Shown here one piece after another: positions 445 through 31,608 of a stretch of 64,000 nt of DNA. Position numbers and translations under genes: made by a program. Position 1 is the stretch's first letter, and each line of letters starts with the position of its first letter. Where the stretch lies: IMG/VR virus record IMGVR_UViG_3300043449_002710, positions 159,261-223,260 of that record. One strand, written 5' to 3'. Under the pieces are notes generated by a model. It was not told where the DNA came from. It did not search any database and saw only the letters and a list, made by a program, of their open reading frames with translations.

Positions 445-699
445 TCACCAGCGCCTCAAGGGGCAGGATTCGCGTTCTTTGCCCACCTTGGCTGCAACTA
501 GACATCCGCAGCGATTACAGGCCTCTTGAGATGGATTAAAATAAGGACAGGATCGGCAAAGACCAATCCTTCTTTCCGTTAACTCCAAGGCCGAAGGGGC
601 TTGTCCTGACTCTAAAGCCAACCGCCGAGCCGAAGCCGCATTTAAAGCAGGTACAGAAGATAAAGGCGCAGTCTTGCGCCCCCCACAGCAATAACCCAT
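445..699 (-). CDS. Small Cys-rich protein (DUF6171-like putative Zn-binding protein)
   Basis: CRSCPYF-x6-CNRCGC-x4-K-x6-CP-x2-W motif; paralog at 53493-53726. Start moved to the internal ATG (MGYCC) at 699. Confidence 0.6.
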   Translation of the reverse strand: MGYCCGGRKTAPLSSVPALNAASARRLALESGQAPSALELTERRIGLCRSCPYFNPSQEACNRCGCLVAAKVGKERESCPLRRW

Positions 700-769
700 T
701 TGAACCTCAAAAAAGAAAGGGTAGGTGCCCGAAAGCACCTACCCCCCATTTTACCGATTCGCCAATAAA

Positions 770-3184
770 TCAGATCCGGTAAGCACCGCTGACGTAGAGG
801 ATGTCCCCAGCTTCAAGAGCTTCTGGACCGCCTGTAGCCACGTCATTTGCGAAGGTGACCACTGTGACGCCACCCACAACCGAGAGGGTGTAATCGTCGC
901 TAGCACCTGCGTTCAACATGAGGCGACCCACGTTGACAACCAACGAATCCACTTCGTAGTTGTGAGCGAGAGTCACAGCCTGCAAGCTGATTTCAGCAGC
1001 GCCGAGAACGTGCTTTTCTTTATCGAAGAGATAATGATCTGCTTCGAGAGAGAGAACACGAGAACTCAAGCTACCTTCAGCAATCATAGCGCGGCTGTAC
1101 TCGTCGGCGACTGCTCCGTAGAGCGAGGTCTCAGCGATAACAGCGCGGCTATACTCGTCGGCAACTGCACCAGCGCTGATTGCAGCCAAAGACTGTTCAG
1201 CGATGTAAGCACGGCTGTACTCAGCAGCGACTGCTCCATAGAGCGAGGTCTCAGCGATAACAGCACGGCTATACTCTTCTGCCACAGAAGCTGTGCCCAA
1301 CATTGCCAAGGACTGCTCAGCAATATAAGCGCGGCTATACTCAGCGGCGACTGCTCCGTAGAGCGAGGTCTCAGCGATAACAGCACGGCTATACTCTTCT
1401 GCCACAGAAGCTGTGCCCAACATTGCCAAGGACTGTTCAGCGATGTAGGCACGGCTATACTCAGCAGCGAGATTAGCTTGGAGTGTAGTCTCAGCCAAGT
1501 ATGCCCGGGTATATTCAGCGGCAATCGCTGCTTGGCCAGAGCCTTCAACCACAGTCAACTGCTTCAAGTTAACAGCATCACCTAGTTGATTGCCATCTGC
1601 TACTTCAACAATTCTCCTATTGTGAATCCAGATTCTATCTAAATAACCATAAGAGATAGCTGGAGAACCACCCCCATCACTAAATGTTCTGTTAGAAACA
1701 TCCCAGTTAGCGGTCGTTCCAACTTGGACATAATTCGCATAAAGAGCATTAAATGCAGTAGCCCCACTACCAATAGCAAGACCACCAACCCCGGCCACAA
1801 TACTACCGGTCATCGTACCGCCAGCCAAAGGAAGCTTGGTTGCTTCAGCGGCAAATGCACGGCTGTACTCAGCAGCAAGATTAGCTTGGAGTGTTGTTTC
1901 AGCTAAAACAGCACGGCTATACTCTGCTACCAGATTAGCCTGGAGTGTTGTCTCAGCCAAAACAGCGCGGCTGTATTCATTGGTGATGCTGTTCAGAACA
2001 TTCGTCGAGACAGTCAACTGATCGCCAACTGTGGTGATTGTTGTACCATCAACCAGAACATTCAGAATGTTTCCAGACCAAGCCAAAGCCACACCGGCTT
2101 CAATAGCGCCTGGGCCAGCAAACTCAATCCAGCTAGAGGATGTCGAGCTGTAAACGTAGTTGTGACCGAAAGAATACGAATTATCTTCGTTCACAAATAC
2201 GGCTTGGCCGTTATTCGGAGTGATAGTGGTGTAAGTCAGCGGAGAAAGAGTAGCGACAACAACGATGTCGTTTTCTTTACCTGCCAAGCCACCAGTTGCT
2301 GTTCCACCTTCAAAAGCAACACCAAAGCGATCACCAACTGCAACCAGACCTAAGTCCACCCAAACAGAGCCCACGGCGTCCCAACGGACAGCGTGGCCTT
2401 CTAAACCAGTCCAAGCACCTGTGGCAGTGGCTGCAACGATGTAGACAAGTTTAGGATCTGGGGAACCCGGAGGTGTTGCCAGATTATCGGAGATCAGGTT
2501 TGGATCGAGGATCGGATCGAGCCAAACAAGGCCGTTGACGACAGCGTCGAGCTGAGCTTTGTTCACAGCATCGTAAGCATTCACACCGTCAGCCAGATTG
2601 ATGATCTTCTGACGGGTTTCGCTGTTCATGTCGAGAGCGCCTGTCATCGGACGTGTGCCATCGAGCAGCAAGAAGGTCGCTTCGGCGGCAAGTGCGCGGC
2701 TAACTTCCGAATCCAGACCCATCTGCAGGGTGGTTTCAGCTAAAACAGCGCGGCTATACTCGTCGGCAACTGCACCAGCACCACTGGAGGCCAGAGATTG
2801 CTCGGCAAGGAAAGCCCGGCTGTACTCAGCGGCAACCGCTGCGTAGAGTGATGTCTCAGCTACGACAGCGCGGGTGGTTTCTTCATCTAAACTGCCAGAG
2901 AGAACTGTCAGATTAGAATCCAGATTACCTGCCAAGGTGTTGAGGCTTTGTTCTGCGATATAAGCGCGGCTGTACTCAGCGGCGAGATTAGCTTGGAGTG
3001 TAGCTTCGGCCAAAACAGCGCGGCTATACTCTTCACCCAAGGCTACCTGCAAAGAACCTTCAACCAGAGAGGCGCGAGTAATCTCAGCGTCCAACTGGCT
3101 AGTTAGAGCGATGGAACTATCGACTTTAGAAGCGTCGATTGCTCCATCGAGGATAAATTTTCTTTTGATTTGAGACACTGACAT
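770..3184 (-). CDS. Fibre/adhesin-like virion protein with EYSRA coiled-coil repeats, two DAVN neck motifs and a DUF2793-like segment
   Basis: 804 aa, AAGGAG RBS. About 18 E-Y-S-R-A-x2-A-E-x2-L units; KIINLADGVNAYDAVNKAQL and RRIVEVADGNQLGDAVNLKQL resemble YadA-type neck motifs; PPGSPDPKLVYIVAATATGAWTG resembles DUF2793. Confidence 0.7.
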   Translation of the reverse strand: MSVSQIKRKFILDGAIDASKVDSSIALTSQLDAEITRASLVEGSLQVALGEEYSRAVLAEATLQANLAAEYSRAYIAEQSLNTLAGNLDSNLTVLSGSLDEETTRAVVAETSLYAAVAAEYSRAFLAEQSLASSGAGAVADEYSRAVLAETTLQMGLDSEVSRALAAEATFLLLDGTRPMTGALDMNSETRQKIINLADGVNAYDAVNKAQLDAVVNGLVWLDPILDPNLISDNLATPPGSPDPKLVYIVAATATGAWTGLEGHAVRWDAVGSVWVDLGLVAVGDRFGVAFEGGTATGGLAGKENDIVVVATLSPLTYTTITPNNGQAVFVNEDNSYSFGHNYVYSSTSSSWIEFAGPGAIEAGVALAWSGNILNVLVDGTTITTVGDQLTVSTNVLNSITNEYSRAVLAETTLQANLVAEYSRAVLAETTLQANLAAEYSRAFAAEATKLPLAGGTMTGSIVAGVGGLAIGSGATAFNALYANYVQVGTTANWDVSNRTFSDGGGSPAISYGYLDRIWIHNRRIVEVADGNQLGDAVNLKQLTVVEGSGQAAIAAEYTRAYLAETTLQANLAAEYSRAYIAEQSLAMLGTASVAEEYSRAVIAETSLYGAVAAEYSRAYIAEQSLAMLGTASVAEEYSRAVIAETSLYGAVAAEYSRAYIAEQSLAAISAGAVADEYSRAVIAETSLYGAVADEYSRAMIAEGSLSSRVLSLEADHYLFDKEKHVLGAAEISLQAVTLAHNYEVDSLVVNVGRLMLNAGASDDYTLSVVGGVTVVTFANDVATGGPEALEAGDILYVSGAYRI
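1100..1530 (-). repeat. 120-bp (40-aa) coding tandem repeat inside the 804-aa fibre gene
   Basis: The lines starting at 1261 and 1381 are nearly identical; unit AAEYSRAYIAEQSLAMLGTASVAEEYSRAVIAETSLYGAV. Confidence 0.9.
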
Positions 3185-4394: not shown

Positions 4395-6986
4395 TTAACG
4401 CGCACCAACACCTAATCGGTTATTGGTGTTAAACTGTTGAGTTGCGGCTGTACCAATATCGAGCACAAGCTTTTGTGTTTGAGATGTTCCAACAATCTGT
4501 CCGTTCACATAGATGGGTGGAGCGGCTGCATTGGTAACAGCCCCAGGTACGGCGGTCGGAGATGCGGCAGACATCGGCATTGGTGCCTGGGCAACTGGTG
4601 TCGCAGCTATTTCCCCAGAATAGGCAGTTGGGACTTTTGGAACTAAAATAGTTTTCTTGGATTCAACCGGAAAAATTTGATCTATTGTTTTAGAACTAGC
4701 CAAATTAACTGAATCGGAAATATTTTCTACTGAGTTCTCTAAAAGATTTTTTTCACTGGCGGATCTTAATTTATTAATTTGCTCTAGAAGAGGGGCAACC
4801 ATTTTTTCATGCCGAGCCTTTTCGTAAGCTCTGTCTTCTGGTGTTTTAGCTTTTTTTAACCTCTCCAAATAATTTTGATCTTCAATGTCTTTTTTAGCAG
4901 AGTATTCTTCGATTTGTTTGTTTCGGCTGTATTGGTCAAAAATAGATAATCCCATCGATGCGGCTGCGGCAACACCAACAGCGGTCGCCCCGCCTGAAAA
5001 CTTTGCTATCAATAAACCTAGAATTCCAGCTACACCAACCGAAATTTTACCTACGTTAGTATCTAACGCAGTTATAGCTTGTTGCAAACCTCCGCCAGTT
5101 AACCAAGTTCTGGCGACATTCTTTTTCTTCTCTTCTTCCGCAATTTGCTTCATTTTTTCTTCAGAGCCTTGAAGGTTATCTAATTTCTCTTGTAAATGTG
5201 CGGCCAAAGATTGGTCTCCCTTGGATTTAGCTATTTCTAAATCTTTTTTAACCGCCTCAATCGCTTCTTCTCGCTTCTTTTTAATCTGTTCTTCAGAGGT
5301 GCCTAGAGCTTTCTTTTCTTTCTCCATCAGAATGCCTTCGATTTTCTTTTTCAATTCGAACCGATGCTCTTCTTTTTTATAGTATTCAGCAGATGCCTCT
5401 TCCATCCCGTACATAAGCTTAATCTGCTCTTTGCTGAGATTTTTAAAATTGTTTGCTTGCTCCGTCGCTTGCTTGCCGAGCTTTGCTTGTTGAACCATTT
5501 GATCCGCAACTAGCGGATCTGTAATTCCATAAATTTGTTGAATCGCTTGGACTGCGTTAGCGCCACTTTTTGAAACAATGTCATTGATGGATTTTTCCAT
5601 AGCTTCAATGCCCACCCCAGTATCTTGTAGTAAGCGTTGAACCATTTGTTGTTTAGTATACTCAGAAGCTTTATTGCTTGGGCTCATGATTGCAGCAATT
5701 TGTTTAGAAAGCCCAGGCTTGGCAGCCTCTAGTTGATCCCGCAAAGCCCCTGTAATATTTGAACCCGCCATTGAAGCTCGGATCGTTTTTGAGAGATCTC
5801 TGCCAGATAAAATTCTAGTCCAATCGGGGGCTTCTGTAGTCAACTTTTTGATGTAAGTTGTAGCGCCTTTCAGAGAAGCTTCGTAACTATAACCTTGAGC
5901 TTGCAAAGCCACCATGTTTTTGGTGATCATTTTTGCTAGTAAATCTTGCTCCTGAGCGCCGGATTGCGATTCTCTAGCTAAATCAAAAATAACTTTGGTG
6001 ACATCTCTACCGATGATTACTGTTTTTTGTAATTCTGTGTTCGTGCTCTGAGTAATGTCACGGATGTTTTTTAAAACCATAGCAGATTGAGTGCCTGTTC
6101 TTCCGAATTTTAAATTCGCTTCCACAACATAATCTGTAGCATCGCCCAAGGATACTTGGAGAGCGGAAGCTAAGTAACCGGTAACCTCGGTGAGGTTTTC
6201 CATGCTCTCAGCGGAATGATCAGACCAAGCTGTGATTTGAGAGAATCTTTTGAAGGAATCAGCAGTTTCTTCGGCTGAAATACCCAAACCCGCCATAGCT
6301 ATTTGAGCTTTTCCCAGACTCCAACTGTAATCCTTTGCTCTATCTGCTAAAACCTTAAAGTCATCGTTTATATTTCCAGTCATCCCGATGAATGAACCGG
6401 AAGTGAGAGAAATATCTACTACGTCTTGTACTGCTCTACCCGCGCCTTTCAGCCCTGAAATCAATCTTTCAGTAGAAAGAATCCACCCGAGAGCCTGAGC
6501 CACACCGGAAGAAAAAAGCTTTCCTAAAAGACCAACCGATTTTTTTGTTTCTTCTAAAGCTCCTTTTTGAGCTTTTATCTGCCGCTCAGTAATGCTGAGT
6601 TGAGCTTCTTCTTTTCTGATCTTTTCACCCAAAGCTTCCAAGGATTTTTTTTCTAAGGCTAAGCGCTCCTTAAGGTCTTTAGTTTCTTCTTCCTTGGCCG
6701 ATTCAATGCTTTTTTCAAGTTCTTTGATTTTATCAAGTTGAGAAATTCTATCTACATAAAGCTTAGATAGCTTTCCCTCGATAACCAAAGCTTCTTTAGA
6801 CCCTTTGGCGATAGCATCGTAAATGGATGCCAAAGTGTTGAGCTGCTTAGATGCTGCTGTTGCCCCAGTTTTGGCTGCCTCCGCTGCTTTTCTGGCAAAG
6901 ACATCTGCAGTAGCTTCAGCCGATTTGATGGTCGCTTCTAAGCCTTTGATCGCGGCATTAGCTTGATCTATATTCTTCTCAGCCAT
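4395..6986 (-). CDS. Tape-measure-like protein
   Basis: 863 aa, Ala/Lys/Glu-rich helical; Gly/Ala-rich hydrophobic segments (ISVGVAGILGLLIAKFSGGATAVGVAAAASMGLSIF); lies downstream of a chaperone-like frameshift pair. Confidence 0.65.
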   Translation of the reverse strand: MAEKNIDQANAAIKGLEATIKSAEATADVFARKAAEAAKTGATAASKQLNTLASIYDAIAKGSKEALVIEGKLSKLYVDRISQLDKIKELEKSIESAKEEETKDLKERLALEKKSLEALGEKIRKEEAQLSITERQIKAQKGALEETKKSVGLLGKLFSSGVAQALGWILSTERLISGLKGAGRAVQDVVDISLTSGSFIGMTGNINDDFKVLADRAKDYSWSLGKAQIAMAGLGISAEETADSFKRFSQITAWSDHSAESMENLTEVTGYLASALQVSLGDATDYVVEANLKFGRTGTQSAMVLKNIRDITQSTNTELQKTVIIGRDVTKVIFDLARESQSGAQEQDLLAKMITKNMVALQAQGYSYEASLKGATTYIKKLTTEAPDWTRILSGRDLSKTIRASMAGSNITGALRDQLEAAKPGLSKQIAAIMSPSNKASEYTKQQMVQRLLQDTGVGIEAMEKSINDIVSKSGANAVQAIQQIYGITDPLVADQMVQQAKLGKQATEQANNFKNLSKEQIKLMYGMEEASAEYYKKEEHRFELKKKIEGILMEKEKKALGTSEEQIKKKREEAIEAVKKDLEIAKSKGDQSLAAHLQEKLDNLQGSEEKMKQIAEEEKKKNVARTWLTGGGLQQAITALDTNVGKISVGVAGILGLLIAKFSGGATAVGVAAAASMGLSIFDQYSRNKQIEEYSAKKDIEDQNYLERLKKAKTPEDRAYEKARHEKMVAPLLEQINKLRSASEKNLLENSVENISDSVNLASSKTIDQIFPVESKKTILVPKVPTAYSGEIAATPVAQAPMPMSAASPTAVPGAVTNAAAPPIYVNGQIVGTSQTQKLVLDIGTAATQQFNTNNRLGVGAR

Positions 6987-8071
6987 TAGCGCCTCTTGTA
7001 CTGATCAGCATTCATGGTCTGATCGATCACATTGTCAGAAAGCCCAAAAACATCTCGCAATAATAATTTGAGTGTATGAGAAGAACCCGTAAATAGAAGG
7101 TTTGCCTCCTCGGACTGTTCTTCATAATCCACGATCTTAGTTGTGTTTTCAGTTAACCCCTCTTTGGAAAGCCAATCGGATAATTTTTGACGATCCACTG
7201 GGATCGTTTCAATAGAGATCTTGCTCAGGGGTATGGCTCTTTTTAGGGTTTGAACTTTCTCGGGTTCTTCTTGAGTCTTTTTCTGCTCTTCTGTTTTCGT
7301 TTTCTGAACTAAGGGCTTCCCACTTTTGATCTTTTTGATGGCGTCTTCTTTGAATCCGATCTTTTTAAGAAGCTCTTCTGCGAGATCCTTAGGTCCACTA
7401 TAAGAAAGTTCTTTGGTGTCCTTGTCAAAGTGGATGGAGTCAGGCCCGTCAAAATAAAAATCCTTGTCCTGATAAAAGCGAGTGACCAAGGTTTCAATCT
7501 GGTCCTCGGTCTTTGGGCTCAAAAGATTTTCTGAATGAACTAAGACCGTAAACTGAATGTCAGCTAATTGGTTGGCTTGCTCTTTCTTAGCTTGTTCAAG
7601 AAGCTTATTAGCTTCATTTTCTTTCATTCCAAAAGAATTGAGCAACGACTCGGCAATATCCAAAGGACCTTGGTAGCTGAGTTTTAAGCTCTCGGGCTCG
7701 AACTTGACATCATTGGGGCTATCAAATCGTAACCTGTTCTCCGTGTAGAAAAGAGCTACTTTTTTCTCGATCTCCTGGGGAGTCTTGGGTGTGGATAGTT
7801 TCTCTGGAGTAAGCTTAACTTGAAACTCTATTTTATCCTTAGAGCGCTCCACTCGGAGCAATCGCTCCAGCTCTTCGGGCTCTAAATCCAGAAGATTTCT
7901 CTTTTGTAACAATTCTCTGACCCAAGGCGAGTCTTTAGTTTGAGTATACCGTGTCTTAATCTTGTTAACTAAATCGTCTATTTTACCAGCCAACACCCGT
8001 TGGAAAGCTCGGGTGCTTTTGGTGTCGGCGGAACCTGTCAGAAAATGCAAAAGGGTATTCCTTGAAGGCAT
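6986..8071 (-). CDS. Hypothetical protein with 2-3 internal ~80-aa repeats
   Basis: 361 aa; ...STPKTPQEIEKKVALFY...FDSPNDVKF...LSYQGPLDIAESLL and ...LSPKTEDQIETLVTRFY...FDGPDSIHF...LSYSGPKDLAEELL; TAATG overlap with the tape-measure gene. Confidence 0.75.
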   Translation of the reverse strand: MPSRNTLLHFLTGSADTKSTRAFQRVLAGKIDDLVNKIKTRYTQTKDSPWVRELLQKRNLLDLEPEELERLLRVERSKDKIEFQVKLTPEKLSTPKTPQEIEKKVALFYTENRLRFDSPNDVKFEPESLKLSYQGPLDIAESLLNSFGMKENEANKLLEQAKKEQANQLADIQFTVLVHSENLLSPKTEDQIETLVTRFYQDKDFYFDGPDSIHFDKDTKELSYSGPKDLAEELLKKIGFKEDAIKKIKSGKPLVQKTKTEEQKKTQEEPEKVQTLKRAIPLSKISIETIPVDRQKLSDWLSKEGLTENTTKIVDYEEQSEEANLLFTGSSHTLKLLLRDVFGLSDNVIDQTMNADQYKRR

Positions 8072-8080
8072 ATATTAAAA

Positions 8081-8506
8081 CTAACCTTCACCTGTCGGGA
8101 CTTTGGGAAGTTTCTTTTGCCCGAAGAAATCCAAGAACTCTTGCGGAGAAACCTTCGAAAGATCGACCACCACTTCATTGGGCGCTTTTTTATAGCCTGA
8201 GGGTAATACCATTCCAGCACTGCCAACCATCCGCATCAAACCTTCCCTGAACTCGGGTCGGATCGCAAAGGCCAAAGGCACAAGCACCTTATCGGCATTC
8301 TTGTATTCAGCGGATTCCCCATTTTTTTTACCCCAGGACCTAATCTCACCGGCTGAGAAAGTGGTGCCCAGCAAGCGACCGATCTGGCCCAAGCGTTCGT
8401 TCTCAACTTCCTTGACCCAGAAATAAAGAAAGGCTCTTTCCTCTAGGCTTAGGTCCCTTAGTTCTTCCCAGCTACGGTTGGTGGCGGCCCAAAGATACCC
8501 GAGCAC
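8081..8506 (-). CDS. Tail assembly chaperone T-like ORF (probably made as a -1 frameshift extension of the upstream gene)
   Basis: 141 aa; SWEELRDLSLEERAFLY resembles gpT-type segments. No RBS; the GTG lies in a hairpin; the frame is open back to a CCCTTTG slippery site. Confidence 0.65.
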   Translation of the reverse strand: MLGYLWAATNRSWEELRDLSLEERAFLYFWVKEVENERLGQIGRLLGTTFSAGEIRSWGKKNGESAEYKNADKVLVPLAFAIRPEFREGLMRMVGSAGMVLPSGYKKAPNEVVVDLSKVSPQEFLDFFGQKKLPKVPTGEG

Positions 8507-8535
8507 CGAAAGCTCGGGATCGTCCTTGGTCGCCT

Positions 8536-9693
8536 TTACTGCAAAGGGAGGGCTTCTACCTCAGAGGTCAAACCACGATCATCCATGGGGATGCCATGGA
8601 TCTGGCAGAAGACTGGCACTCCTTTTTCCACCGCCAAGTCATAAACTTCTTTGCAGTCATCTACAGGGCAGGTGAACTTTCTTTGCTTAGGATCAAAAGA
8701 GGATTTCAGTCCCAAGTCTTTGAAAGAAACTTCAAAGGCGGTGTAGATTTTTTCAACCAAGTTAGGATTAAAGGGGAACAAATTGTCCAGGGAGGGTTCT
8801 CCTTGGTACATCTCGATCAAGGTTTGGGCAGTCAGGATTCTAACCTCCGTGGGAGGATTCAAAGGGTCTTTGACCGAACCTTCTGGAACTAATTCAAGCA
8901 CTTCAGCAATCGGCATTTTCTCAACTCGAACAATACCTGTGGCTGCCGTACAAAGCTTCAGCATCATTTTGACTGCTTCAGTTTGACCCGCTACTTCTTG
9001 GATCTTATTGAGAACCCAAGGATAAACAGAAGACGGTGGAGGTAGAAGCTCGAAACCCACGTCTTCAACTATCACTTCCACGGGCTTTACTCTTTCAAGT
9101 GAAAGTTTCTCGCGCATCTTTTTCAAGACCGGATTCACTTCTTTTTTGAAAGTCTTTGGGGTTGCCGCTGCCTGCGGCTGCGATTGTTGTTGCTGGGCTG
9201 CTTCTTTTTCAGCCTTTCTTTGTAGTTCGAGTTTTCTTTTTTTCAATTCCAATTCTTTCAACTCGATCTCAAGCAGTTCTTCTTCAGTCAAATTACTACC
9301 TTCTTCCAAAGCTTTGGGTTCTGATGCTGGGGTTTTTTCCACGGGTTCCACTTTCTGTTCTAATTTTTTGCCCTTAGTCTTGAGTAATTCTTCTACTGTG
9401 ATCCCTCGTTCTTTGGCGATCTCTCGCAAAGCGTACTCATTCAACTCAGGATCAAATTTTCGAGTTTGATTCCCGGCAAAAGGTTCCTCGGGCTTTGCCT
9501 TTTCTTCCATGTATTTTGAAACTTGATCTTGGGGAATCACCGGGAAAGGAGCAGGAGTAGGATCGCCTAGATCTTTTCTTTTATTAGTAGGGCGCTCTGG
9601 CATCTTGGGCTTTGAAGGCTGAAAATCATCCACCACAGGACGTGCATCTTTAAATCGACTACCCATGGTCTGCTTGATCTTTTCGTCATCCAT
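8536..9693 (-). CDS. Tail assembly chaperone G-like protein with C-terminal Cys/His motif
   Basis: 385 aa, GGAG RBS; ends ...CPVDDC...CQIH...EALPLQ* over a C CCT TTG heptamer. Confidence 0.55.
   Translation of the reverse strand: MDDEKIKQTMGSRFKDARPVVDDFQPSKPKMPERPTNKRKDLGDPTPAPFPVIPQDQVSKYMEEKAKPEEPFAGNQTRKFDPELNEYALREIAKERGITVEELLKTKGKKLEQKVEPVEKTPASEPKALEEGSNLTEEELLEIELKELELKKRKLELQRKAEKEAAQQQQSQPQAAATPKTFKKEVNPVLKKMREKLSLERVKPVEVIVEDVGFELLPPPSSVYPWVLNKIQEVAGQTEAVKMMLKLCTAATGIVRVEKMPIAEVLELVPEGSVKDPLNPPTEVRILTAQTLIEMYQGEPSLDNLFPFNPNLVEKIYTAFEVSFKDLGLKSSFDPKQRKFTCPVDDCKEVYDLAVEKGVPVFCQIHGIPMDDRGLTSEVEALPLQ
8542..8548 (-). other. Candidate -1 ribosomal frameshift site C CCT TTG
   Basis: X XXY YYZ heptamer in the zero frame, two codons before the stop; the -1 frame is open into the 141-aa ORF. 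Confidence 0.7.
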
Positions 9694-9775: not shown

Positions 9776-10000
9776 ATGAGCAGGTTGCGACTTGAACTAG
9801 GAAAAATCTATCAAACCTTAGGGGCTGGTACTGTCACGATTATCGAAAAGAAAATCACGGGCAGAAAAATCTTCACTGGCCAGCTTCAAGACGGAACCTT
9901 GATTCAATATTTCAGAAACGGAAGATTCTCCAATGCCTCTCAAAGAAAGGGAGGCCATCGTTTTGACATTGTCATAAAGCCTGTAGAAGTTTATCAATAG
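9776..10000 (+). CDS. Hypothetical protein
   Basis: 74 aa, GAAGGA RBS, plausible composition. Confidence 0.6.
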   Translation: MSRLRLELGKIYQTLGAGTVTIIEKKITGRKIFTGQLQDGTLIQYFRNGRFSNASQRKGGHRFDIVIKPVEVYQ

Positions 10001-10844
10001 CCCCTGATTCGTGTGCTTTGGCAAGCAATTTTAAGAATTCACAATAGCCTGCCTGATCCAAATACTTCCAGATCACTTCGGCGGGCTGAAATCTCTCAAA
10101 TCTTCCCACATTCCGATCCAAGACAAACTTCTTTCGAAGCTCATCGTGCATCTTTTTTCTGCCTTGCCAAACCTCAACAAACTCTTCCACCAATCGATCC
10201 ACGGCTTGTTTGACCGACAGCTTCTGAGTTTCAATCCTCTCGTCCACGATTTCAGGATCTCTTGGGTTTTCTTTCTGGGCTTGCAGGGCTTTCTTAAGGA
10301 CCGACCATTGCCTAGAAACATTCCCCATCAAAAGATCGATTTCTTCGGCTTTCTTTTCGGCCATTTCAATGATGGGCTTAAAATAAATCTCAGGATCAAA
10401 GTCCTTTGGAAGAATCAAAGGAGGAAGCTTCCAGCGATCCCGCATCACATCGTAGGAGGCATCGGCAACCTCAACTTGCTCGGTCTGATCCGATGGCTTC
10501 ACAAAAAGATGGATGACATATCCAGCCCAGGGAATCTCGACATTCTTGAAAGCCTCTTGAAGAATCTCTTCATCGCCTTTGAATTTTTCCCAATCAATGT
10601 AGCACGAACAGTCAATGTCAGCGCCGCTGTGATACTGATAAGTCGCCGCTCCGCCATACAACATGACGCCAATCAGATCCGCCCCAAACTTTTTTAGTCG
10701 GTAGCGAGCTTCTTTGAGAATCTCTGCGCGAAGCTTGGGCTGAAGCCTAGGGAGCGGCTTATCTTCTTCATAAAGCCACACCTCTGGCGGAAGAGTCTTG
10801 CGCGGAAAATCTAAAATCCCAGCTTCAATTACGTGAGCGGCCAT
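9972..10844 (-). CDS. Pol-beta-superfamily nucleotidyltransferase
   Basis: MLYGGAATYQYHSGADIDC fits hG[GS]-x9-13-Dh[DE]h; helical C-terminal region. Confidence 0.7.
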   Translation of the reverse strand: MAAHVIEAGILDFPRKTLPPEVWLYEEDKPLPRLQPKLRAEILKEARYRLKKFGADLIGVMLYGGAATYQYHSGADIDCSCYIDWEKFKGDEEILQEAFKNVEIPWAGYVIHLFVKPSDQTEQVEVADASYDVMRDRWKLPPLILPKDFDPEIYFKPIIEMAEKKAEEIDLLMGNVSRQWSVLKKALQAQKENPRDPEIVDERIETQKLSVKQAVDRLVEEFVEVWQGRKKMHDELRKKFVLDRNVGRFERFQPAEVIWKYLDQAGYCEFLKLLAKAHESGAIDKLLQAL

Positions 10845-10966: not shown

Positions 10967-11740
10967 ATGACAATGCGTAAGATTCAAATTTTTGAGCAAG
11001 ACCAAAAGTACCGCAAAGACTTGAGCGATTTTTTGATTATGGTCCATGGGGCCAAGAGCACCGAGGATGCTTCCGTTTTGGAAGTTCCAGAGGAATTGGA
11101 CGTGGATGCTTTTCACGGCATCAAGTTGGTGGACACCAATGCGCCCAAGCTGCCGCTCATCCAACCTGCGGTTCCGTTCAAGGATCGGCATCCTGAGGTG
11201 GTCGAATGGCTCAATAACTACAAAGGCAATTTTGAATTTTACTTGAGCTTAAAGTCTCAGCTTGAAGCCAAAGGCAGTTTGTCTGAAAAGCAGGTCGATG
11301 CGGTCAAACGTGCTATCGATAAGGACGTGCAGCGAGCGAGCAAACGGACTTTATCCACAAGTTCTCAAACCGTTCGCTTGTCTTTGTCTGCAGGCGAGAT
11401 TTTGTTGATCTCCAAATTCTTCGCCCGAAAGCTTGCTGAGCAAGCAGGTGCAATCCGCCCACACTATGTCTTTGAGGTTTTATCCGTCGAAGCAGAGACT
11501 GAGAAAGCTTACAAAGTGAAGCTCCGCATGACTGCTCAACGGACCAGCCATTGCGGAGTTTGCGGTTTGACTCTGACGAATCCCGAGTCGGTGGCGGCAG
11601 GTATTGGACCGATTTGCGCTGAAAATACCGGAATCTCTTTCGGGGCTAATTCGTCCTTGGAACTAGCCGAAGCTTTAAAAGAAACCCGCGAGATCGATAC
11701 TTGGCTACCTAAGAGCGTGATCAAATCGAGGCTGTCTTAA
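10967..11740 (+). CDS. DUF6011-like Zn-finger domain protein
   Basis: C-terminal [24 protein letters not shown]; central [16 protein letters not shown] segment. Confidence 0.7.
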
Positions 11741-13155
11741 TAAAACTCCTCAATAATGATGCAACCAGAACCGCCGTTGCCACCTTTACCTGAACCCGAG
11801 CCACCGCCTGTACCACCCGCACCGACTGTGTAATTAAAAGTTACACCAGTATAGGGAATAATTGCACAGATATAGCCACCTGCGCCACCACCAGAACCCC
11901 CATAATAAGTCGTCCCACCTTCAGCCGGGGCACTACTTCCGCCGCCACCGCCACCACTACCGGTATTATTGCTGGCATCGGTTGGGGAGGTCAATCCACC
12001 ACCGCCTGGACCATTTCCACCAAAAAAACTGTTTCCACCGGGTTGTCCCGCTAAAACCGTCGCGGCAGCAGTGCCGCCGCCATTCCATGTGGCATAACCA
12101 GTGCCAGCACTACCAATGACGTTACAAATGACTGTTACACCCGTATAGGCTACGGTCCCACCAGTTCCGCCATTTCTACTAGAGGATGTGGCGGCGTTCC
12201 CAGAATATGCGGTGAGCGCTATAGTTCCGGCCCCATTTGAAAACACAGTATCGACACCATCCGTGCCGTAAGCTAGAGATATTCCACCGCCAGTACCACC
12301 ACCACCACCACCGACCATCTGAATCCGAATATACTTTGCCGTACTCGGCATGGTGTAGGTTCCAGCTCCAAGCGTTGTTATATAGTGAATAGTCGGTACA
12401 GTAGCTGATCCACCACTGCCTGTGGGTCCGGTAGGGCCAACATTGCCCGTAGCGCCCGTAGCGCCCGTGGGGCCCGTGGGGCCTGTAGCGCCCACACCTG
12501 TCGGGCCGGTAGGGCCAACTAAACTGGCTCCCGTGGGTCCGGTAGGACCAACTGCACCCTCTGCGCCTGTCGCGCCCGTAGGGCCTACATCTCCTACAGC
12601 CCCTGTCGGGCCTACCGCACCATCTAAGCCTGCCGAGCCGGTCGCGCCCACCGGTCCTTCCAATCCTGTAGGACCAACTGCGCCTGTGGGGCCAACTGCG
12701 CCTGTGGGGCCAACTGCGCCTGTGGGGCCTGTCACCCCGCGCATCCCAGTCGGGCCGGTCGCCCCTCGTGGACCTAAAGGACCACTGGGTCCCATCGGTC
12801 CTGTCGCGCCCACTGTTCCTGTCGGGCCAACCGCTCCAACCGATCCTGTAGGACCAACCGTGCCACTAGGGCCTGTCGGCCCAGTGGGTCCAAGAGGTCC
12901 CGTGGGGCCAGGAATCTGCACAGGACCCGTGGGGCCTGTCGGTCCTGTCGGTCCTGTCGGACTAGGACCAGAATTCGAAAAGACATCAAAAATTAGAGGG
13001 TCATATGTGGTGTTGATCGCGGCGTTATATTGAGTCTGCGTGATCAAAAAATCGGATAAAGCGGGTACGACCAAATTTTCAGAGGTCAGCCCATAGCTTA
13101 AAACAAAAGTTTGCTGCAGTTCTGTCTTGTTACGAATCGTCCCGTAGTAAGCCAT
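11737..13155 (-). CDS. Collagen-like fibre protein with a C-terminal glycine-rich domain
   Basis: 472 aa; long (G-P-T/G-A-T/G-A-V)n tract, then [22 protein letters not shown], typical of phage Gly-rich fibre tips. Confidence 0.85.
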
Positions 13156-13747: not shown

Positions 13748-14587
13748 TTAGACTAAATACCAGCAAATCAATTCTTGACCTACGACAGGTGCTGTACCGA
13801 AAGTTAGAGCACTTGCTGTCACCGTATATTGGTCTAAACCAGGACCTTGAGCAACAAGAAGCCCGTTTCTGAAAACCAAAACAAACCCTGCTGCATTCGG
13901 AGTGTGAGTCAAAGTAAATTCAGTTGTTGATCCGTTTCCAGCAAAGACTTCTTGATAGGGAACATAAGATCCGGCAGGGCCCGCAGGGCCGGTGGGTCCA
14001 ACAGCTCCATCAGCACCCGCAGGGCCCGCAGGGCCAGTAGGGCCGTCTAAACCCGCAGGGCCGGTGGGTCCAACAGCTCCATCAGCACCCGCAGGGCCCG
14101 CAGGGCCAGTAGGGCCGTCTAAACCCGCAGGGCCAGTAGGGCCCACCAGACTAACTGGATCAATGAAAGCACGATTGTTAATAGATTGCAGTTTAGTCTG
14201 AAGAGGTTCGGAAATAAGTTGAAGTGAAACAGATCCGATTTCGATCAGCTTTTTATTTAAAGAAGTTCTACCAATAAAAGCTGTTCCTGCAGCAGGTCCA
14301 TTGAGATCTTCCGCGCCTTCGTCGTCCCAGATCGAATGAACCCGAATACCGTTTGTAGTAGCCCCAGGATAAGCCGAGGTTCCCACATCTTCAATCGTGA
14401 CAATTTTCCATCGATTGTAAGTCCCGAAAAACGGGCTCTCATCAACAAAAGCGTCTCCGATTTGAACGTCTGTAACAGACCAACCTTCTAATGTAGAGTC
14501 AATGACTTCCCCGATGACTTCCCAAATACCAGAGCCGAGATCGGAAGCGCCTACGATATCAAATCGAGCATTAAACTTTTTAGACAT
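13748..14587 (-). CDS. Collagen-like virion protein with a small C-terminal beta domain
   Basis: 279 aa; GPT/GPA tract with a 72-bp duplication; C-terminal [14 protein letters not shown]...VFRNGLL...YTV...LTF...GQEL. Confidence 0.8.
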
Positions 14588-14599
14588 GGTAAGCCTCTA

Positions 14600-15964
14600 T
14601 TAGAAAGCCAATTTTAATACGCAAGTCACACCTGAGGTTAAACCGTTAATAGTAAGCCTATCAAAGCCAGCAGAAATTGTGGCCGCAACAGCAACAGTTG
14701 CTCCCGAATCTTCTCTCCAAGCGTGATAATTAGGACGCCAAGCATTGGCTGCACTCGTATTGGTGCCAGCTCCACCGCTTGTTCCATATACAACCGTGAA
14801 TTGAGTTCCACCGATTGTCGCCATTGGGAGTCTGATTCTGGCGGAAATCAAATTCACCCCGGCTGGAATTGTAAAAGTTCCAATAGCACCAACGCGAGCA
14901 AAAGTTATCCCACTGCCGTCTGCGAAAACTTCCACCTCTTCATTAGCTGTAGAAGAAGCTATATAACGAGAAAGCGATGCCCCACCACCGCCACCTACGG
15001 TAGTCCAACTCGTGTCGTAATCAGAGGCAGAATTTTTGGTTAATACTTGCCCCATCGAACCACCGGTTGGAACACCTGCACCCGTAGGGCCGGTGGGTCC
15101 TGCTGATCCAGCGGTTCCATTTGCGCCCGCAGGGCCGGTGGGTCCAACAGCTCCATCAGCGCCCGCAGGGCCGGTGGGTCCAACAGCTCCATCAGCGCCC
15201 GCAGGGCCGGGGGGTCCAATAGCTCCATCAGCGCCCGCAGGGCCAACATCACCCTGAGGGCCTGTTGGGCCTCCCGCAGGTCCAGGTTCGCCTTGAGGCC
15301 CCGTAGGGCCCGTATCCCCTACCGCGCCAATCGGTCCTGCCGGGCCCGTAGGTCCAACTTCGCCTGCCGGGCCGGTGGGGCCAGCCGCGCCGTCAGCTCC
15401 AGGGGCACCCGGCGCACCAGGAGAGCCAGGAGAGCCCGCAATGCCGGAGGGGCCCATATCCCCTTGAGGGCCTGTAGGGCCAGTAGGTCCCGCATCGCCA
15501 TCAAAACCCGCAGGGCCTGTCGGTCCCACAGGGCCAGTAGCTCCATCAGCGCCCGCAGGGCCAGTAGCTCCATCAGCGCCCGCAGGGCCAGTAGCTCCAT
15601 CAGCGCCCGCAGGGCCTGTTGGGCCTCCTGCCGGACCCGGCTCGCCTTGGGGGCCCGTAGAACCATTTGCGCCTGCAGGGCCTGTCGGGCCTGCAGATCC
15701 AGCATTACCCGCAGGGCCTGTCGGTCCCGTAGGTCCGGTTGCTCCAGGTTGTGGAGTTGGGGGAGGTGGGATAGGATCGCCTTCTAAAATGATTTCAAAA
15801 ATCAAATGGTCATATTGAGTAGCGGAAGCCACTTCGAGTTGATCAAAAGTCAAAGGATAAAGACCAAAAGCAGGGACACTTAAGGACTCTTGATAAGTCG
15901 AGTAAGCCAAGGTGAAAACTTGCGGGATACCCGTTTTATTTCTAATGTTCGCTACGTATGCCAT
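14600..15964 (-). CDS. Collagen-like fibre protein
   Basis: 454 aa; long Gly-X-Y tract; N-terminal ~60 aa paralogous to the 472-aa collagen protein (MAY..xIRNKT...). Confidence 0.85.
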
Positions 15965-17437: not shown

Positions 17438-18499
17438 ATGCCGCTCAAGATCGCCGTTTACGCTATAGCGAAAAACGAAGAAAAAAATATTTCAAGTTGG
17501 TTGGAAAACACAAAAAATGCAGATTTCCGATTGGTCTGTGACACTGGAAGTACAGACAAAACCTTGGAGATATTGAAAGAAAACAATATCGAAACTTGCC
17601 AGATTACAGTCAGCCCTTGGCGGTTTGACATTGCTCGTAATACCGCGCTGAATCTTCTACCTTCCGATATTGATGTCTGCATTTGGCAAGACTTTGACGA
17701 AACTTTCAATCCGAACTGGAGAGAAGAATTGGAAAAGAATTGGGTGGGTGGGACCACGACCGTCTATCACAAGTATCGAAACAACAATTCTTCCTGGCAA
17801 TGGCACAGCAAAATCCACGCAAGACACTACTGCATTTGGGCAGGCTGCGTACACGAAACATTGAAATGGTCTTGTCCCGAAAAAGATATCTGGATTGCAG
17901 AGATCTATCTAGATGAAAAGCAAGACCTAGAAAAAGACCGATCCGGTTACTTGAAGCTTTTGGAAAAGAAAATATCGGAAGGGGATAACCATTGGAGAAC
18001 TTTTTATTTCCTATCCTCCGAGTATCAAAAAATTGAAAATTGGAATCAGGACATAGCTTATAAGATAAAAAGCTTCCAGTTTTGCCAAGACGGAGGAGTC
18101 TCCAAATCCTACATCGCAAGAAACATCGCTATTTCTTACCAGCAGTTAAAAAACTGGTCGGAAGCTGAGAAGTGGTTAAAGACGGGATTGGATGAAAGCG
18201 AAGAAAGAGAAACTCTTTTTGCCTTAGCCTATTTGTATTACGCACAGAAAAAATGGGGCGAATGCTACATCTACTCCAAAAAGTGCCTTGAAAAAAAAGA
18301 AAGAAGAGACGGATTCACTTTCGATGCGAGAGCCTGGGGAGAATCGCCTTTCGATTTAGCGGCTTTATCCGCCTACAATTTGGAAATGTATTCAGAAGCT
18401 TGTTCTTTGGGGAAGAAAGCCCTTGAATTAAAGCCCAACGACCCTAGACTTCTTTTAAATCTCAGAATGTACGAGAACAAAAATGGTCAATCGCGCTAA
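17438..18499 (+). CDS. GT2 glycosyltransferase with TPR-like C-terminus
   Basis: VYAIAKNEE, VCDTGSTDKT, WRFDIARNTAL, DFDE (DxD); helical repeats downstream. Confidence 0.85.
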   Translation: MPLKIAVYAIAKNEEKNISSWLENTKNADFRLVCDTGSTDKTLEILKENNIETCQITVSPWRFDIARNTALNLLPSDIDVCIWQDFDETFNPNWREELEKNWVGGTTTVYHKYRNNNSSWQWHSKIHARHYCIWAGCVHETLKWSCPEKDIWIAEIYLDEKQDLEKDRSGYLKLLEKKISEGDNHWRTFYFLSSEYQKIENWNQDIAYKIKSFQFCQDGGVSKSYIARNIAISYQQLKNWSEAEKWLKTGLDESEERETLFALAYLYYAQKKWGECYIYSKKCLEKKERRDGFTFDARAWGESPFDLAALSAYNLEMYSEACSLGKKALELKPNDPRLLLNLRMYENKNGQSR

Positions 18500-31156: not shown

Positions 31157-31608
31157 GTATGAAAAGTTTGAATAAAAGAAAGTTCCCAAAGCTGTCAAAA
31201 GTATTAAGCTACATCGACAAAGCCGTCCCCAAAGAAATGTGTGACTGTGGTGCGACCTCCACGGGAAGCAACATGCACTCGACTTGGTGCAAAGGCGTGA
31301 AACCGGCTGAAGCTTCTAGCCAAGAGATCGAGAAGCTGGCCAAAAAATTCAGCGAGCTTTTGCGCTCGGATCATACCGCCGAAGAGATGGAAGAAGTGAT
31401 TGAAAAAAATCGCGAGCACAAGGCCAACGGAGATAATGGGATCTGCGCTACCCACGATATCTGTGACGCCAACATGGTCATGCTCGATGCTTTTAAAAGC
31501 GTCACCGGCAGAGAACCTAGCTTTTTAACAGACTCCGAAAACGAAGCCGATATGCCGCTTTGGAACAAAGCTTGGGAATTAGCCAAAGCTAATGAGTTCT
31601 GGGTCTAA
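31153..31608 (+). CDS. Hypothetical protein with N-terminal KFP motif
   Basis: 151 aa; RKFPKLSKVL; CDCG...HSTWC; ICATHDICDANMVM. Confidence 0.7.
   Translation: MSMKSLNKRKFPKLSKVLSYIDKAVPKEMCDCGATSTGSNMHSTWCKGVKPAEASSQEIEKLAKKFSELLRSDHTAEEMEEVIEKNREHKANGDNGICATHDICDANMVMLDAFKSVTGREPSFLTDSENEADMPLWNKAWELAKANEFWV

What the first reader, a model, noticed from the sequence alone, without database searches (positions are those of the whole stretch)
8081..9693. Programmed -1 frameshift (G/GT type) at C CCT TTG giving a ~537-aa fusion
The 385-aa ORF ends CTC CCT TTG CAG TAA. The heptamer C CCT TTG (8548-8542) fits X XXY YYZ. The -1 frame is open for 13 codons (FAVKATKDDPELS) into the 141-aa ORF. That ORF has no RBS, and its GTG lies in a 7-bp hairpin (CCCGAGC-N7-GCTCGGG, 8498-8518). 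Established: tail assembly chaperones upstream of tape-measure genes commonly use this frameshift (lambda G/GT). Unusual here: G is very large, has a Cys/His finger, and a 361-aa gene lies between GT and the tape measure.
Basis: partly seen in the sequence, partly recalled or inferred. Interest (0 to 1): 0.6.

Follow-up and report, generated by a model that had tools for sequence, protein, structure and literature searches.

The report
Frameshifted tail chaperone of jumbo phage
An uncultivated 223-kb freshwater phage very probably makes two versions of a tail-assembly helper protein by letting a small share of ribosomes slip back one base at a conserved C-CCU-UUG site; this is the well-known lambda G/GT trick, here in a previously undescribed and unusually large protein family.

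Summary
In 11 distinct homologous loci (G proteins about 38-55% identical) the heptamer C CCU UUR is invariant in the X XXY YYZ register while neighbouring synonymous sites are saturated. The 0-frame stop always lies one codon further on. The -1 frame is always open for 150-158 codons into a homologous ORF that has no conserved start codon or Shine-Dalgarno. A stable stem-loop with compensatory changes always begins 6-7 nt after the heptamer. Of 144 family members, 114 end in P-L-x-stop, and none has K/E/Q/M/W, which lack C-ending codons, before the Pro.

G residues ~185-328 model as a tail-assembly-chaperone fold. HK97 gp13 and YqbN are the top two of 48,161 PDB chains. The 863-aa gene downstream is weakly tape-measure-like, and tail-fibre genes flank the module.

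So this is a lambda-type G/GT system: G is 43.6 kDa and GT is 537 aa, 60.5 kDa. The family is absent from Pfam and PHROGs. It carries a 180-aa N-terminal extension, a C-terminal zinc ribbon, and a conserved extra gene between GT and the presumed tape measure. Frameshifting itself and chaperone function remain untested experimentally.

The parts
8536..9693 (-). Gene G (385 aa, 43.6 kDa), the 0-frame product. Residues 1-184 are an extension, mostly poorly modelled, with a conserved helix-turn-helix-like motif (82-105) and a long helix (137-167). Residues ~185-328 are a tail-assembly-chaperone-like domain. Residues ~336-380 are a CX4C...CX2H zinc ribbon (C342, C347, C363, H366 invariant).
   Evidence: ORF list and sequence. 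There are 20 homologs of 373-434 aa. AF2 model m48577125a2e4. Fold matches to HK97 gp13 2OB9 (Z 6.4-6.9) and YqbN 3KLU (Z 5.8), plus BFVD and ESM-Atlas TAC clusters. The start ATG has GGAG 9 nt upstream.
8559..8562 (-). GAGG, a Shine-Dalgarno-like tetramer 10 nt 5' of the heptamer. It is a possible upstream stimulator as in dnaX. It is present in 6 of 11 loci, so it is optional.
   Evidence: Read from the sequence. Codon table of the 11 loci: GAG at codon -4 in 8/11, followed by G in 6. The stimulatory role is inferred only.
8542..8548 (-). Slippery heptamer C CCU UUG (X XXY YYZ in the G frame), the proposed site of the -1 tandem slip (CCU->CCC in the P site, UUG->UUU in the A site).
   Evidence: Invariant as C CCT TTR in 11/11 distinct loci. 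The codon before always ends in C across 5 different amino acids. Pro is always CCT, while another invariant Pro uses all 4 codons. Leu is always TTR and never CTN. The shift window allowed by stops in the two frames is only 8560-8539 here, and as little as ~18 nt in L013. C_CC.U_UU.G and C_CC.U_UU.A frameshift at >0.1% without stimulators in E. coli (PMC4066793).
8536..8538 (-). TAA stop of the 0 frame, exactly one codon after the heptamer.
   Evidence: Same position in 11/11 loci (TAA 6, TAG 5). 114 of 144 family members end P-L-x-stop.
8483..8534 (-). 52-nt stem-loop of 18 bp starting 7 nt 3' of the heptamer, the presumed frameshift stimulator.
   Evidence: MFE -30.6 kcal/mol, z -4.2. Equivalent stem-loops of -21 to -32 kcal/mol begin 6-7 nt after the heptamer in all 11 loci. 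The consensus base stem has pair types GC/AU/CG/UA at one pair and CG/GC/UA at another. 93% of cells are paired, against 37-51% when partners are slid. Covariation score 0.340 against 0.189 +/- 0.028 in shuffles.
8081..8542 (-). T segment: 153 codons in the -1 frame plus the stop. It is translated only as the C-terminal part of GT (537 aa, 60.5 kDa; junction ...EVEALPL|AVKATK...).
   Evidence: Open in all 11 loci for 150-158 codons and homologous throughout. There is no conserved start codon or SD, and gene callers give 107-145 aa. Residues A4, D8 and G15, upstream of any start, are invariant. Model helix 9-20 (pLDDT ~88-90) spans the GTG codon 13. Length and mass.
6986..8071 (-). 361-aa gene between GT and the presumed tape measure. 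It is a conserved member of the module (227-365 aa in relatives), has an internal domain duplication in this phage, and its function is unknown.
   Evidence: Synteny in homolog contigs. Alignment A5. No family hit.
4395..6986 (-). 863-aa presumed tail tape-measure protein.
   Evidence: Protein-language-model neighbours are tape-measure clusters (score 0.95, PF10145/PF20155). The only PF20155 (TMP_3) hit in the whole 223-kb record lies at its residues ~185-284, below threshold (E 0.0023, 14.6 bits). The same core aligns weakly to lambda gpH 144-294 (E 0.11). There is a Gly/Ala-rich hydrophobic segment at 643-685. Length is conserved at 864-923 aa in the relatives whose full gene is held. No significant Pfam, PDB or cultured-phage match.
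3565..4326 (-). 253-aa gene that follows the presumed tape measure. Its length is nearly invariant (252-254 aa in most relatives, 274 in one) and its function is unknown.
   Evidence: Synteny. No hit in any library.
770..3184 (-). 804-aa tail-fibre-like protein (YadA-stalk and DUF2793 motifs), which ends the module.
   Evidence: Pfam PF10983 and PF05662; PHROG tail-fibre families.

Best explanation
Genes G (9693..8536) and T (8542..8081) of this jumbo phage are expressed as two proteins from one message. Most ribosomes translate G to its stop and release a 385-aa protein. A minority pause with CCU in the P site and UUG in the A site because the 52-nt stem-loop starting 7 nt downstream resists unwinding. 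Both tRNAs then re-pair one base back (CCC, UUU), and translation continues in the -1 frame through GCA GUA AAG... to give a 537-aa GT fusion.

G carries a tail-assembly-chaperone domain. By analogy with lambda gpG/gpGT, many G copies and a few GT copies would coat the 863-aa tape-measure protein, and the T part would recruit the tail-tube subunit. Neither protein would end up in the virion.

Shown here: the signal, its conservation, the lack of an independent start for T, and the chaperone-like fold of G. Inferred: that slipping happens and at what rate, the tape-measure identity of the 863-aa protein, and all binding partners.
For: (1) Heptamer.
- C CCT TTR is in register in 11/11 distinct loci with G about 38-55% identical.
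- The codon before it is NNC across five different amino acids.
- Pro is always CCT and Leu always TTR, while other invariant Pro, Gly, Cys and His codons vary freely.

(2) Stop and -1 frame.
- The 0-frame stop is exactly one codon later in 11/11.
- The -1 frame is open for 150-158 codons in 11/11.

(3) Superfamily level.
- 114 of 144 members end P-L-x-stop.
- The residue before Pro is never K/E/Q/M/W, the amino acids without C-ending codons. That is 0/114 against a 24% background.
- None of the 132 representatives has G and T fused in one frame.

(4) Stem-loop.
- It begins 6-7 nt after the heptamer in all loci.
- MFE is -21 to -32 kcal/mol and z is -1.7 to -5.6.
- It shows compensatory changes.

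(5) T has no independent start.
- There is no conserved start codon or SD, and gene callers disagree on the start.
- The only candidate here, GTG, sits inside the hairpin.
- Invariant residues and a confident helix lie upstream of and across it.

(6) Chaperone fold.
- An unbiased alignment against 48,161 PDB chains gave HK97 tail assembly chaperone 2OB9 (Z 6.4, 100 of 104 residues) and YqbN 3KLU (Z 5.8, 103 of 119) as the top two. The next hits (Z <= 4.6) align only to the long helix at residues ~126-175.
- The re-alignment gave 2OB9 Z 6.9.
- BFVD and ESM-Atlas hits are enriched in annotated tail assembly chaperones.
- Both PDB proteins are described as tail assembly chaperones in PMC9603447.

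(7) Context.
- The 863-aa gene is tape-measure-like.
- Tail-fibre genes lie on both sides.
- Terminase and portal genes lie 6-9 kb before the window start, about 11-18 kb from the G/T genes.
- The module order is conserved in relatives.

(8) C_CC.U_UU.G/A is measurably shifty in E. coli (PMC4066793). The lambda G/GT mechanism is described in PMC5009743.
Against: - There is no experimental or proteomic evidence for the fusion. No RNA or independent DNA run holds the locus.
- The fold match is moderate (Z 6-7, 6-12% identity), and the tool's own note says Z under 8 can be a common arrangement.
- There is no sequence similarity to lambda G, T or H or to any Pfam, PHROG or NCBIfam chaperone or tape-measure family at threshold.
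- The T fold matched nothing informative.
- No tail tube or sheath gene was recognised. The gene upstream of G is a 290-aa nucleotidyltransferase-like protein, not a major tail protein.
- A 361-aa gene separates T from the presumed tape measure.
- In one relative (L010) no tape-measure-sized gene follows within 8 kb.
- Part of the conservation of the first 18 T-frame residues could reflect the RNA stem rather than the protein.
Confidence: 0.78

Rival explanations
1. The -1 frameshift is real, but the products are not tail-assembly chaperones. G/GT would serve another morphogenetic or regulatory role, such as a scaffold for a baseplate or fibre complex, or a DNA- or RNA-binding factor that uses the zinc ribbon and the N-terminal helix-turn-helix-like motif. 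The resemblance to HK97 gp13 would then be a common small alpha/beta arrangement.
For: - The fold Z is only 6-7.
- There is no sequence-level link to any chaperone family.
- G is three times the usual chaperone size, with extra domains.
- An extra gene lies before the presumed tape measure.
- No tube gene lies upstream.
- In L010 no tape-measure-sized gene follows.
- The tape-measure assignment is sub-threshold.
Against: - Both top hits of an unbiased search of 48,161 chains are chaperones, and each covers nearly the whole target. Three libraries agree.
- The G-then-T-in-frame--1 arrangement ahead of a ~860-920-aa helical protein with a hydrophobic Gly-rich segment is the classic tail-module signature.
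- Tail-fibre genes flank the module.
Confidence: 0.14
2. There is no programmed frameshift. T would be made on its own by initiation at GTG 8506 or by termination-reinitiation after the G stop. The conserved nucleotides would then serve another purpose, such as an RNA processing or stability element or a coupling signal.
For: - A GTG exists 27 nt after the G stop.
- Gene callers annotate separate T genes everywhere.
- Nothing here measures translation.
Against: - The GTG is not conserved. Candidate start codons in the 11 loci lie at different positions (from codon 6 to codon 34), and the few SD-like motifs found are not at a shared position.
- Here the GTG is buried in a stable stem.
- Invariant T-frame residues and a confident helix lie upstream of every candidate start.
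- An RNA element does not explain why the codon before Pro must end in C across 114 proteins, why Leu is never CTN, or why the stop is always one codon after the heptamer.
Confidence: 0.06
3. Artefact: an assembly or sequencing indel split one 537-aa gene, or the gene is a decaying pseudogene.
For: Only the source sample holds this exact DNA.
Against: Eleven distinct sequences (16 loci) from independently assembled metagenomes show the identical frame arrangement. None of the 132 representatives in 1.84 billion proteins is a fused form.
Confidence: 0.01

Closest known systems
Bacteriophage lambda gpG / gpGT tail assembly chaperones (-1 frameshift at G GGA AAG; Levin et al. 1993, Xu et al. 2004, 2013, 2014, as summarised in PMC5009743)
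   Same: - Two ORFs, the second in the -1 frame and without its own start.
- An X XXY YYZ heptamer a few codons before the G stop.
- A short product plus a C-terminally extended fusion.
- A T part of similar size (144 against 153 aa).
- A following long helical protein of nearly the same length (gpH 853 aa against 863 aa).
   Different: - No sequence similarity to G, T or H.
- G is 385 aa rather than 140 aa, with an N-terminal extension and a zinc ribbon.
- The heptamer is C CCU UUR.
- A conserved stem-loop follows the site. To my knowledge lambda needs none.
- A conserved 227-365-aa gene sits between T and the presumed tape measure.
- No major tail protein gene lies directly upstream.
HK97 gp13 tail assembly chaperone (PDB 2OB9) and Bacillus subtilis skin-prophage YqbN (PDB 3KLU)
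   Same: These are the best structural matches to G residues ~185-328. 2OB9: Z 6.4-6.9, 99-100 of 104-107 residues aligned. 3KLU: Z 5.8, 103 of 119. Both are treated as tail assembly chaperones with a shared core in PMC9603447.
   Different: - Sequence identity is 6-12% and the Z-scores are moderate.
- These proteins are single-domain, ~110-140 aa, without a zinc ribbon or N-terminal extension.
E. coli dnaX tau/gamma frameshift signal (upstream SD-like element, heptamer, downstream stem-loop)
   Same: The signal here has the same three-part layout: GAGG 10 nt upstream, the slippery heptamer, and a stable stem-loop 7 nt downstream. The dnaX layout is stated from my own knowledge.
   Different: - The upstream GAGG is present in only 6 of 11 relatives.
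- Here the shifted product is the longer one, whereas in dnaX it is the shorter one.
- The heptamer differs (A AAA AAG in dnaX).

Membership tests
Lambda-type G/GT frameshifted tail assembly chaperone pair | A second ORF in the -1 frame overlaps the 3' end of the first and lacks its own translation start. | tested here: met
   The -1 frame is open from 8560. There is no conserved start or SD in 11 loci, and conserved residues lie upstream of all candidate starts.
Lambda-type G/GT frameshifted tail assembly chaperone pair | A conserved slippery sequence (X XXY YYZ) lies in the overlap, near the end of G. | tested here: met
   C CCT TTR is invariant and in register in 11/11 loci against saturated synonymous sites. 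There is a protein-level footprint in 114/144 family members.
Lambda-type G/GT frameshifted tail assembly chaperone pair | G has the tail-assembly-chaperone fold. | tested here: met
   2OB9 (Z 6.4-6.9) and 3KLU (Z 5.8) are the top two of 48,161 chains. BFVD and Atlas chaperone clusters also match. The strength is moderate and rests on a predicted model (pLDDT 80-92 in this domain).
Lambda-type G/GT frameshifted tail assembly chaperone pair | The pair lies immediately upstream of the tape-measure gene. | tested here: inconclusive
   A conserved 361-aa gene intervenes. The 863-aa gene is tape-measure-like only by language-model neighbours (0.95), a sub-threshold TMP_3 hit, a weak gpH alignment and its composition. 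It has no significant family or PDB hit.
Lambda-type G/GT frameshifted tail assembly chaperone pair | The pair lies downstream of the major tail (tube) protein gene. | tested here: not met
   The gene upstream of G is a 290-aa nucleotidyltransferase-like protein. No sheath (PF04984) is found in the record. The ~127-aa gene upstream of G in relatives is absent here. A tube gene may simply be unrecognisable or lie in the missing ~19% of the genome.
Lambda-type G/GT frameshifted tail assembly chaperone pair | G and GT are made at a fixed high:low ratio, both are needed for tail assembly, and both are absent from virions. | not testable with these tools
   This needs expression, genetics and virion proteomics.
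Curated tail-assembly-chaperone sequence families (Pfam Phage_TAC families, PHROG chaperone families) | A significant profile match. | tested here: not met
   G and T have no Pfam or PHROG hit; their only NCBIfam rows are chance-level (E 0.14-0.15, far below the cut-offs). The 30 distant relatives have no Pfam or PHROG chaperone hit. So this is a family of its own, not a member of a described sequence family.

The most novel reading that the evidence does not exclude
The family is more than a large chaperone. It would be a distinct, widespread class of multi-domain tail-assembly factors in uncultivated large freshwater phages. In this class the zinc ribbon placed directly before the slip site, the N-terminal helix-turn-helix-like and coiled-coil extension, and the conserved extra gene between GT and the tape measure would form a three-protein assembly system. 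The zinc ribbon or its nascent chain might even tune the frameshift rate. The invariant cassette (NNC CCU UUR NNN stop plus stem-loop) would be a fixed ratio-setting device kept across the whole superfamily.
Probability: 0.2. Interest if true: 0.55.

Novelty: new variant of a known kind. Interest (0 to 1): 0.42.

Why it matters
- Annotation. The result gives a confident annotation for two genes, and a tentative one for the tape measure, in a lineage of large uncultivated phages that has no hits in Pfam, PHROGs or cultured-phage genomes.
- Reach of the G/GT strategy. It extends the G/GT frameshift to a new chaperone superfamily of 132 representative clusters.
- A test case for gene callers. The signal is unusually clean and easy to recognise: the protein ends in P-L-x, never has K/E/Q/M/W before the Pro, and is followed by a covarying stem-loop. 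Gene callers and frameshift predictors could use it. Every gene call examined for the family (17 T-side proteins; the loci) splits the gene and places the T start at a different position.
- Open questions. The extra domains on G and the extra conserved gene raise questions about how very long or complex tails are assembled.
- Limits. It is not a new mechanism.

Tried and rejected
Family and sequence searches that found nothing:
- Pfam and PHROGs gave no hit for G and T. For the 361-aa, 863-aa and 253-aa proteins they gave only chance-level rows, and NCBIfam gave only chance-level rows for all of them.
- tblastn of G, T, the 863-aa protein and two distant relatives against 50,697 cultured-phage records gave no match.
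- IMG/VR scans with G, alignment A1 and the distant alignment A9 gave no confirmed locus. A scan of GTDB genomes gave none. A8 was too diverse to scan with.
- PDB sequence searches with G, the 863-aa protein and its profile, and the 253-aa protein gave nothing significant.
- hhalign of the G, T and 863-aa profiles against lambda G, T and H gave no similarity for G and T, and E 0.11 for H.
- Rfam at a permissive threshold found no known RNA family over the junction.
- Sheath (PF04984), PhageMin_Tail (PF10145) and TMP_2 (PF06791) gave no hit in the 223-kb record.

Structure and context:
- The T model was searched against BFVD and 48,161 PDB chains. Only generic helical matches came back.
- Atlas feature search for the 253-aa protein scored 0.76, which is uninformative.
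- The ~127-aa gene that overlaps the start of G in most relatives was tested as a tube candidate. It is absent from this genome.

Steps that could not be run or were left out:
- Sequencing runs: only the probable source sample holds the DNA, and no RNA run does.
- The joined 537-aa GT sequence has no reference. It was computed only inside a script, for length, mass and junction, and was not sent to any search or fold tool.

Considered and rejected:
- Transcriptional slippage: there is no long homopolymer.
- Intrinsic terminator: no U-tract follows the stem.
- The weak resemblance of the zinc ribbon to human Shiftless and to the aRF1 C-domain (Z 2.9-3.9): generic zinc ribbons such as desulforedoxin, Elf1 and MCM score alike.
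Full report
**Setting.** The window is the last 64 kb of a 223,260-bp IMG/VR virus record, linear and estimated 81% complete. The finding lies on the minus strand. A large terminase and a portal gene lie 6-9 kb before the window start, about 11-18 kb from the G/T genes. Collagen-like tail-fibre genes lie at 11.7-16 kb, and a YadA-stalk/DUF2793 fibre gene at 0.8-3.2 kb. So the finding sits in a virion and tail region of a large, very novel phage from a freshwater metagenome.

**Checking the observation.**
- The 385-aa ORF (9693..8536) ends CTC CCT TTG CAG TAA.
- CCCTTTG is 8548-8542, in the X XXY YYZ register.
- The -1 frame is closed by TGA at 8563-8561 and then runs open through the heptamer for 153 further codons, to a stop at 8083-8081.
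- The only start-type codon in the first 50 codons of that frame is GTG 8506-8504. It has no Shine-Dalgarno, unlike the G start and most of its neighbours.
- That GTG straddles the loop and 3' arm of the hairpin CCCGAGC/GCTCGGG (8518-8498).
- The fusion is 384 + 153 = 537 aa, 60.5 kDa, against 43.6 kDa for G.

The heptamer alone is not above chance. There are 14 copies of CCCTTTR in the window against 23 expected. A second in-register copy lies inside G at 8866-8860.

**Comparative test of the frameshift.** A word search found 20 homologs of G, 373-434 aa and about 36-61% identical to the window's G by BLASTP. None was long enough to be a fusion, although the search range reached 674 aa. All of them end ...P-L-x, except one that ends ...LAF.

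I obtained DNA for 16 homologous loci, which give 11 distinct junction sequences. In all 11:
- the heptamer is C CCT TTG (8 loci) or C CCT TTA (3 loci), in register;
- the 0-frame stop is exactly one codon later;
- the -1 frame is open for 150-158 codons into a homologous ORF.

The codon table shows how strong this is.
- The codon before Pro encodes L, G, I, V or F but always ends in C.
- Pro is CCT 11 times out of 11, while another invariant Pro 14 codons upstream uses all four codons.
- Leu is always TTR and never CTN.
- Invariant Gly, Cys and His codons nearby vary freely.
- The window in which a shift must occur, between the -1-frame stop upstream and the 0-frame stop, is only 22 nt here and about 18 nt in L013. 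It always contains the heptamer.

**T has no start of its own.** Candidate start codons in the 11 loci lie at different positions (from codon 6 to codon 34), and the few SD-like motifs found are not at a shared position. Gene callers give the T homologs anything from 107 to 145 aa. Yet the first 18 residues of the -1 frame are conserved, with A4, D8 and G15 invariant. In the AlphaFold model of T a confident helix (residues 9-20, pLDDT about 88-90) runs straight across the GTG codon.

**RNA structure.** It starts 7 nt after the heptamer (-30.6 kcal/mol, z -4.2).
- Every homolog folds into a comparable stem-loop starting 6-7 nt after its heptamer, at -21 to -32 kcal/mol and z -1.7 to -5.6.
- The apical hairpin changes register between lineages, but the base stem is alignable.
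- One pair occurs as G-C, A-U, C-G and U-A, at two synonymous third positions. Another occurs as C-G, G-C and U-A.
- 93% of cells pair, against 37-51% when the partners are slid. The covariation score is 0.340 against 0.189 +/- 0.028 in shuffles, reached by 0 of 500.
- A GAGG lies 10 nt upstream of the heptamer, as in dnaX, but only in 6 of 11 loci.
- No Rfam family matches.

**Superfamily view.** Family scans left G unexplained, so I ran the exhaustive profile search with the C-terminal 200 residues. It found 132 representative clusters of 117-539 aa.
- In nearly all of them the match runs to the last or next-to-last residue. None carries a T-sized extension.
- Of 144 family members, 114 end in P-L-x-stop.
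- The residue before the Pro is never K, E, Q, M or W, the five amino acids with no C-ending codon. That is 0 of 114 against a 24% background. The three preceding positions have 11, 26 and 43 such residues.

The slippery cassette therefore leaves a footprint at protein level across the whole superfamily. I could not fetch DNA for the distant members, so that part is inferred.

**What the proteins are.** G and T have no Pfam or PHROG hit and only chance-level NCBIfam rows. They have no relative in cultured phages.

The G model has four parts:
- a poorly ordered N-terminal 180 residues with a conserved helix-turn-helix-like motif (82-105) and a long helix (137-167);
- a confident alpha/beta domain at about 185-328;
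- a zinc ribbon with invariant C342, C347, C363 and H366.

An alignment of the model against 48,161 PDB chains, made without any prefilter, put two tail assembly chaperones first. HK97 gp13 (2OB9) scored Z 6.4 with 100 of 104 residues aligned. YqbN (3KLU) scored Z 5.8 with 103 of 119. Everything else scored 4.6 or below and matched only the long helix. The re-alignment gave 2OB9 Z 6.9. Foldseek against BFVD is enriched in annotated tail assembly or tape-measure chaperones. The first ESM-Atlas row is a 'Tail assembly chaperone' cluster, with TM 0.55 by the target. PMC9603447 treats both PDB proteins as chaperones with a shared core, and accepted a match at Z 4.5. The Z values are moderate, so I take the fold as supported but not proven.

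The T model matched nothing informative. This is expected, since T domains have no known common fold.

**The presumed tape measure.** The 863-aa protein has no significant family, PDB or phage match. Four weak lines agree.
- Its language-model neighbours are tape-measure clusters, at 0.95.
- The only TMP_3 (PF20155) hit in the whole record falls in its conserved core, residues about 185-284, at E 0.0023 and below threshold.
- The same core aligns to lambda gpH 144-294 at E 0.11.
- It has a Gly/Ala-rich hydrophobic segment at 643-685.

Its length (863 aa) is close to that of gpH (853 aa). The order G, T, a 227-365-aa gene, an 864-923-aa gene (where the full gene is held) and a 252-254-aa gene (274 in one relative) is kept in the relatives. 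The exception is L010, where no gene of that size follows within 8 kb.

**Mechanism proposed.** This is a tandem -1 slip on C CCU UUG, stimulated by the downstream stem-loop and perhaps by the upstream GAGG. It would give a majority of G and a minority of GT. C_CC.U_UU.G and C_CC.U_UU.A are among the heptamers that shift at more than 0.1% without a stimulator in E. coli, and they are avoided in its genes (PMC4066793). The use of R rather than the more slippery Y at the last position, together with a strong stem-loop, would fit a low, fixed rate. That point is inference. By analogy with lambda (PMC5009743), G and the G part of GT would coat the tape measure and T would recruit the tube subunit.

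**Comparison and novelty.** The system works like lambda G/GT and passes the tests of frame arrangement, slippery site and fold. It does not belong to any described chaperone sequence family. It is not flanked by a recognisable tube gene, and it is separated from the presumed tape measure by a conserved extra gene. G is about three times the usual size and carries a zinc ribbon right before the slip site. I rate it a new variant of a known kind. The mechanism is textbook, but the family, its architecture and the remarkably rigid signal are new.

**Limits.**
- Nothing here shows translation.
- The fusion sequence was not sent to any tool because it has no reference.
- Only the probable source sample holds this DNA.

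Noticed in passing
window 8860-8866 (-): A second C CCT TTG lies in the X XXY YYZ register inside G (residues ~276-278, KDPLNP). A -1 slip there would stop after 6 codons. The motif is not conserved across the family, so it is probably incidental.
   Followed up: partly
window 8536-8688 (-), G residues 336-385: The zinc ribbon just before the slip site gives weak structural matches to human Shiftless (a -1 frameshift inhibitor; Z 3.9) and to the C-domain of archaeal release factor aRF1 (Z 2.9-3.3; also an Atlas row). Generic zinc ribbons score alike, so this is probably coincidence.
   Followed up: partly
window 6986-8071 (-): The 361-aa gene between T and the presumed tape measure contains an internal duplication of a ~90-aa domain in this phage and in L019. 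Other relatives have one copy. The N-terminal ~30 residues and a PLDL-PEE motif are conserved. Function is unknown.
   Followed up: partly
L009 7639-8028, L011/L013 7651-8034, L019 2191-2589: In most relatives a ~110-132-aa gene overlaps the start of G by about 30 nt. It has no counterpart in this genome. Here a 278-nt gap and a 290-aa nucleotidyltransferase-like gene (9972-10844) precede G.
   Followed up: partly
L010 9609-17161: In this relative the G/T pair is followed by a 482-aa glycosyltransferase-like gene and several small genes. No ~880-aa gene lies within 8 kb, so the module is rearranged or interrupted there.
   Followed up: no
window 11737-13155, 13748-14587, 14600-15964 (-): Three genes have long collagen-like G-x-y repeats (GPTGP...) and match many PHROG tail-fibre families. 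The opposite strand shows long spurious ORFs because of the repeats.
   Followed up: partly
window 770-3184 (-): An 804-aa fibre protein carries many copies of an AEYSRA(V/Y)(L/I)AE(T/Q)(T/S)L motif, plus YadA-stalk and DUF2793 hits.
   Followed up: no
L020 10671-13775 and 16028-18283 (record 149.9-157.5 kb): There is an unusually long large terminase (1034 aa, with an N-terminal primase/helicase-loader-like region) and a 751-aa portal. An RNA polymerase sigma-factor-like gene lies at L020 8427-9758.
   Followed up: no
window 17438-19586 (+) and 31605-33419 (-): Two tandem paralogous beta-1,4-glycosyltransferase-like genes (phrog_13126) and a 604-aa HNH/homing-endonuclease-like gene.
   Followed up: no
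window 445-738 (-): A 97-aa Cys-rich ORF matches phrog_13558 (unknown function; E 3.5e-14). It lies just downstream of the fibre gene.
   Followed up: no
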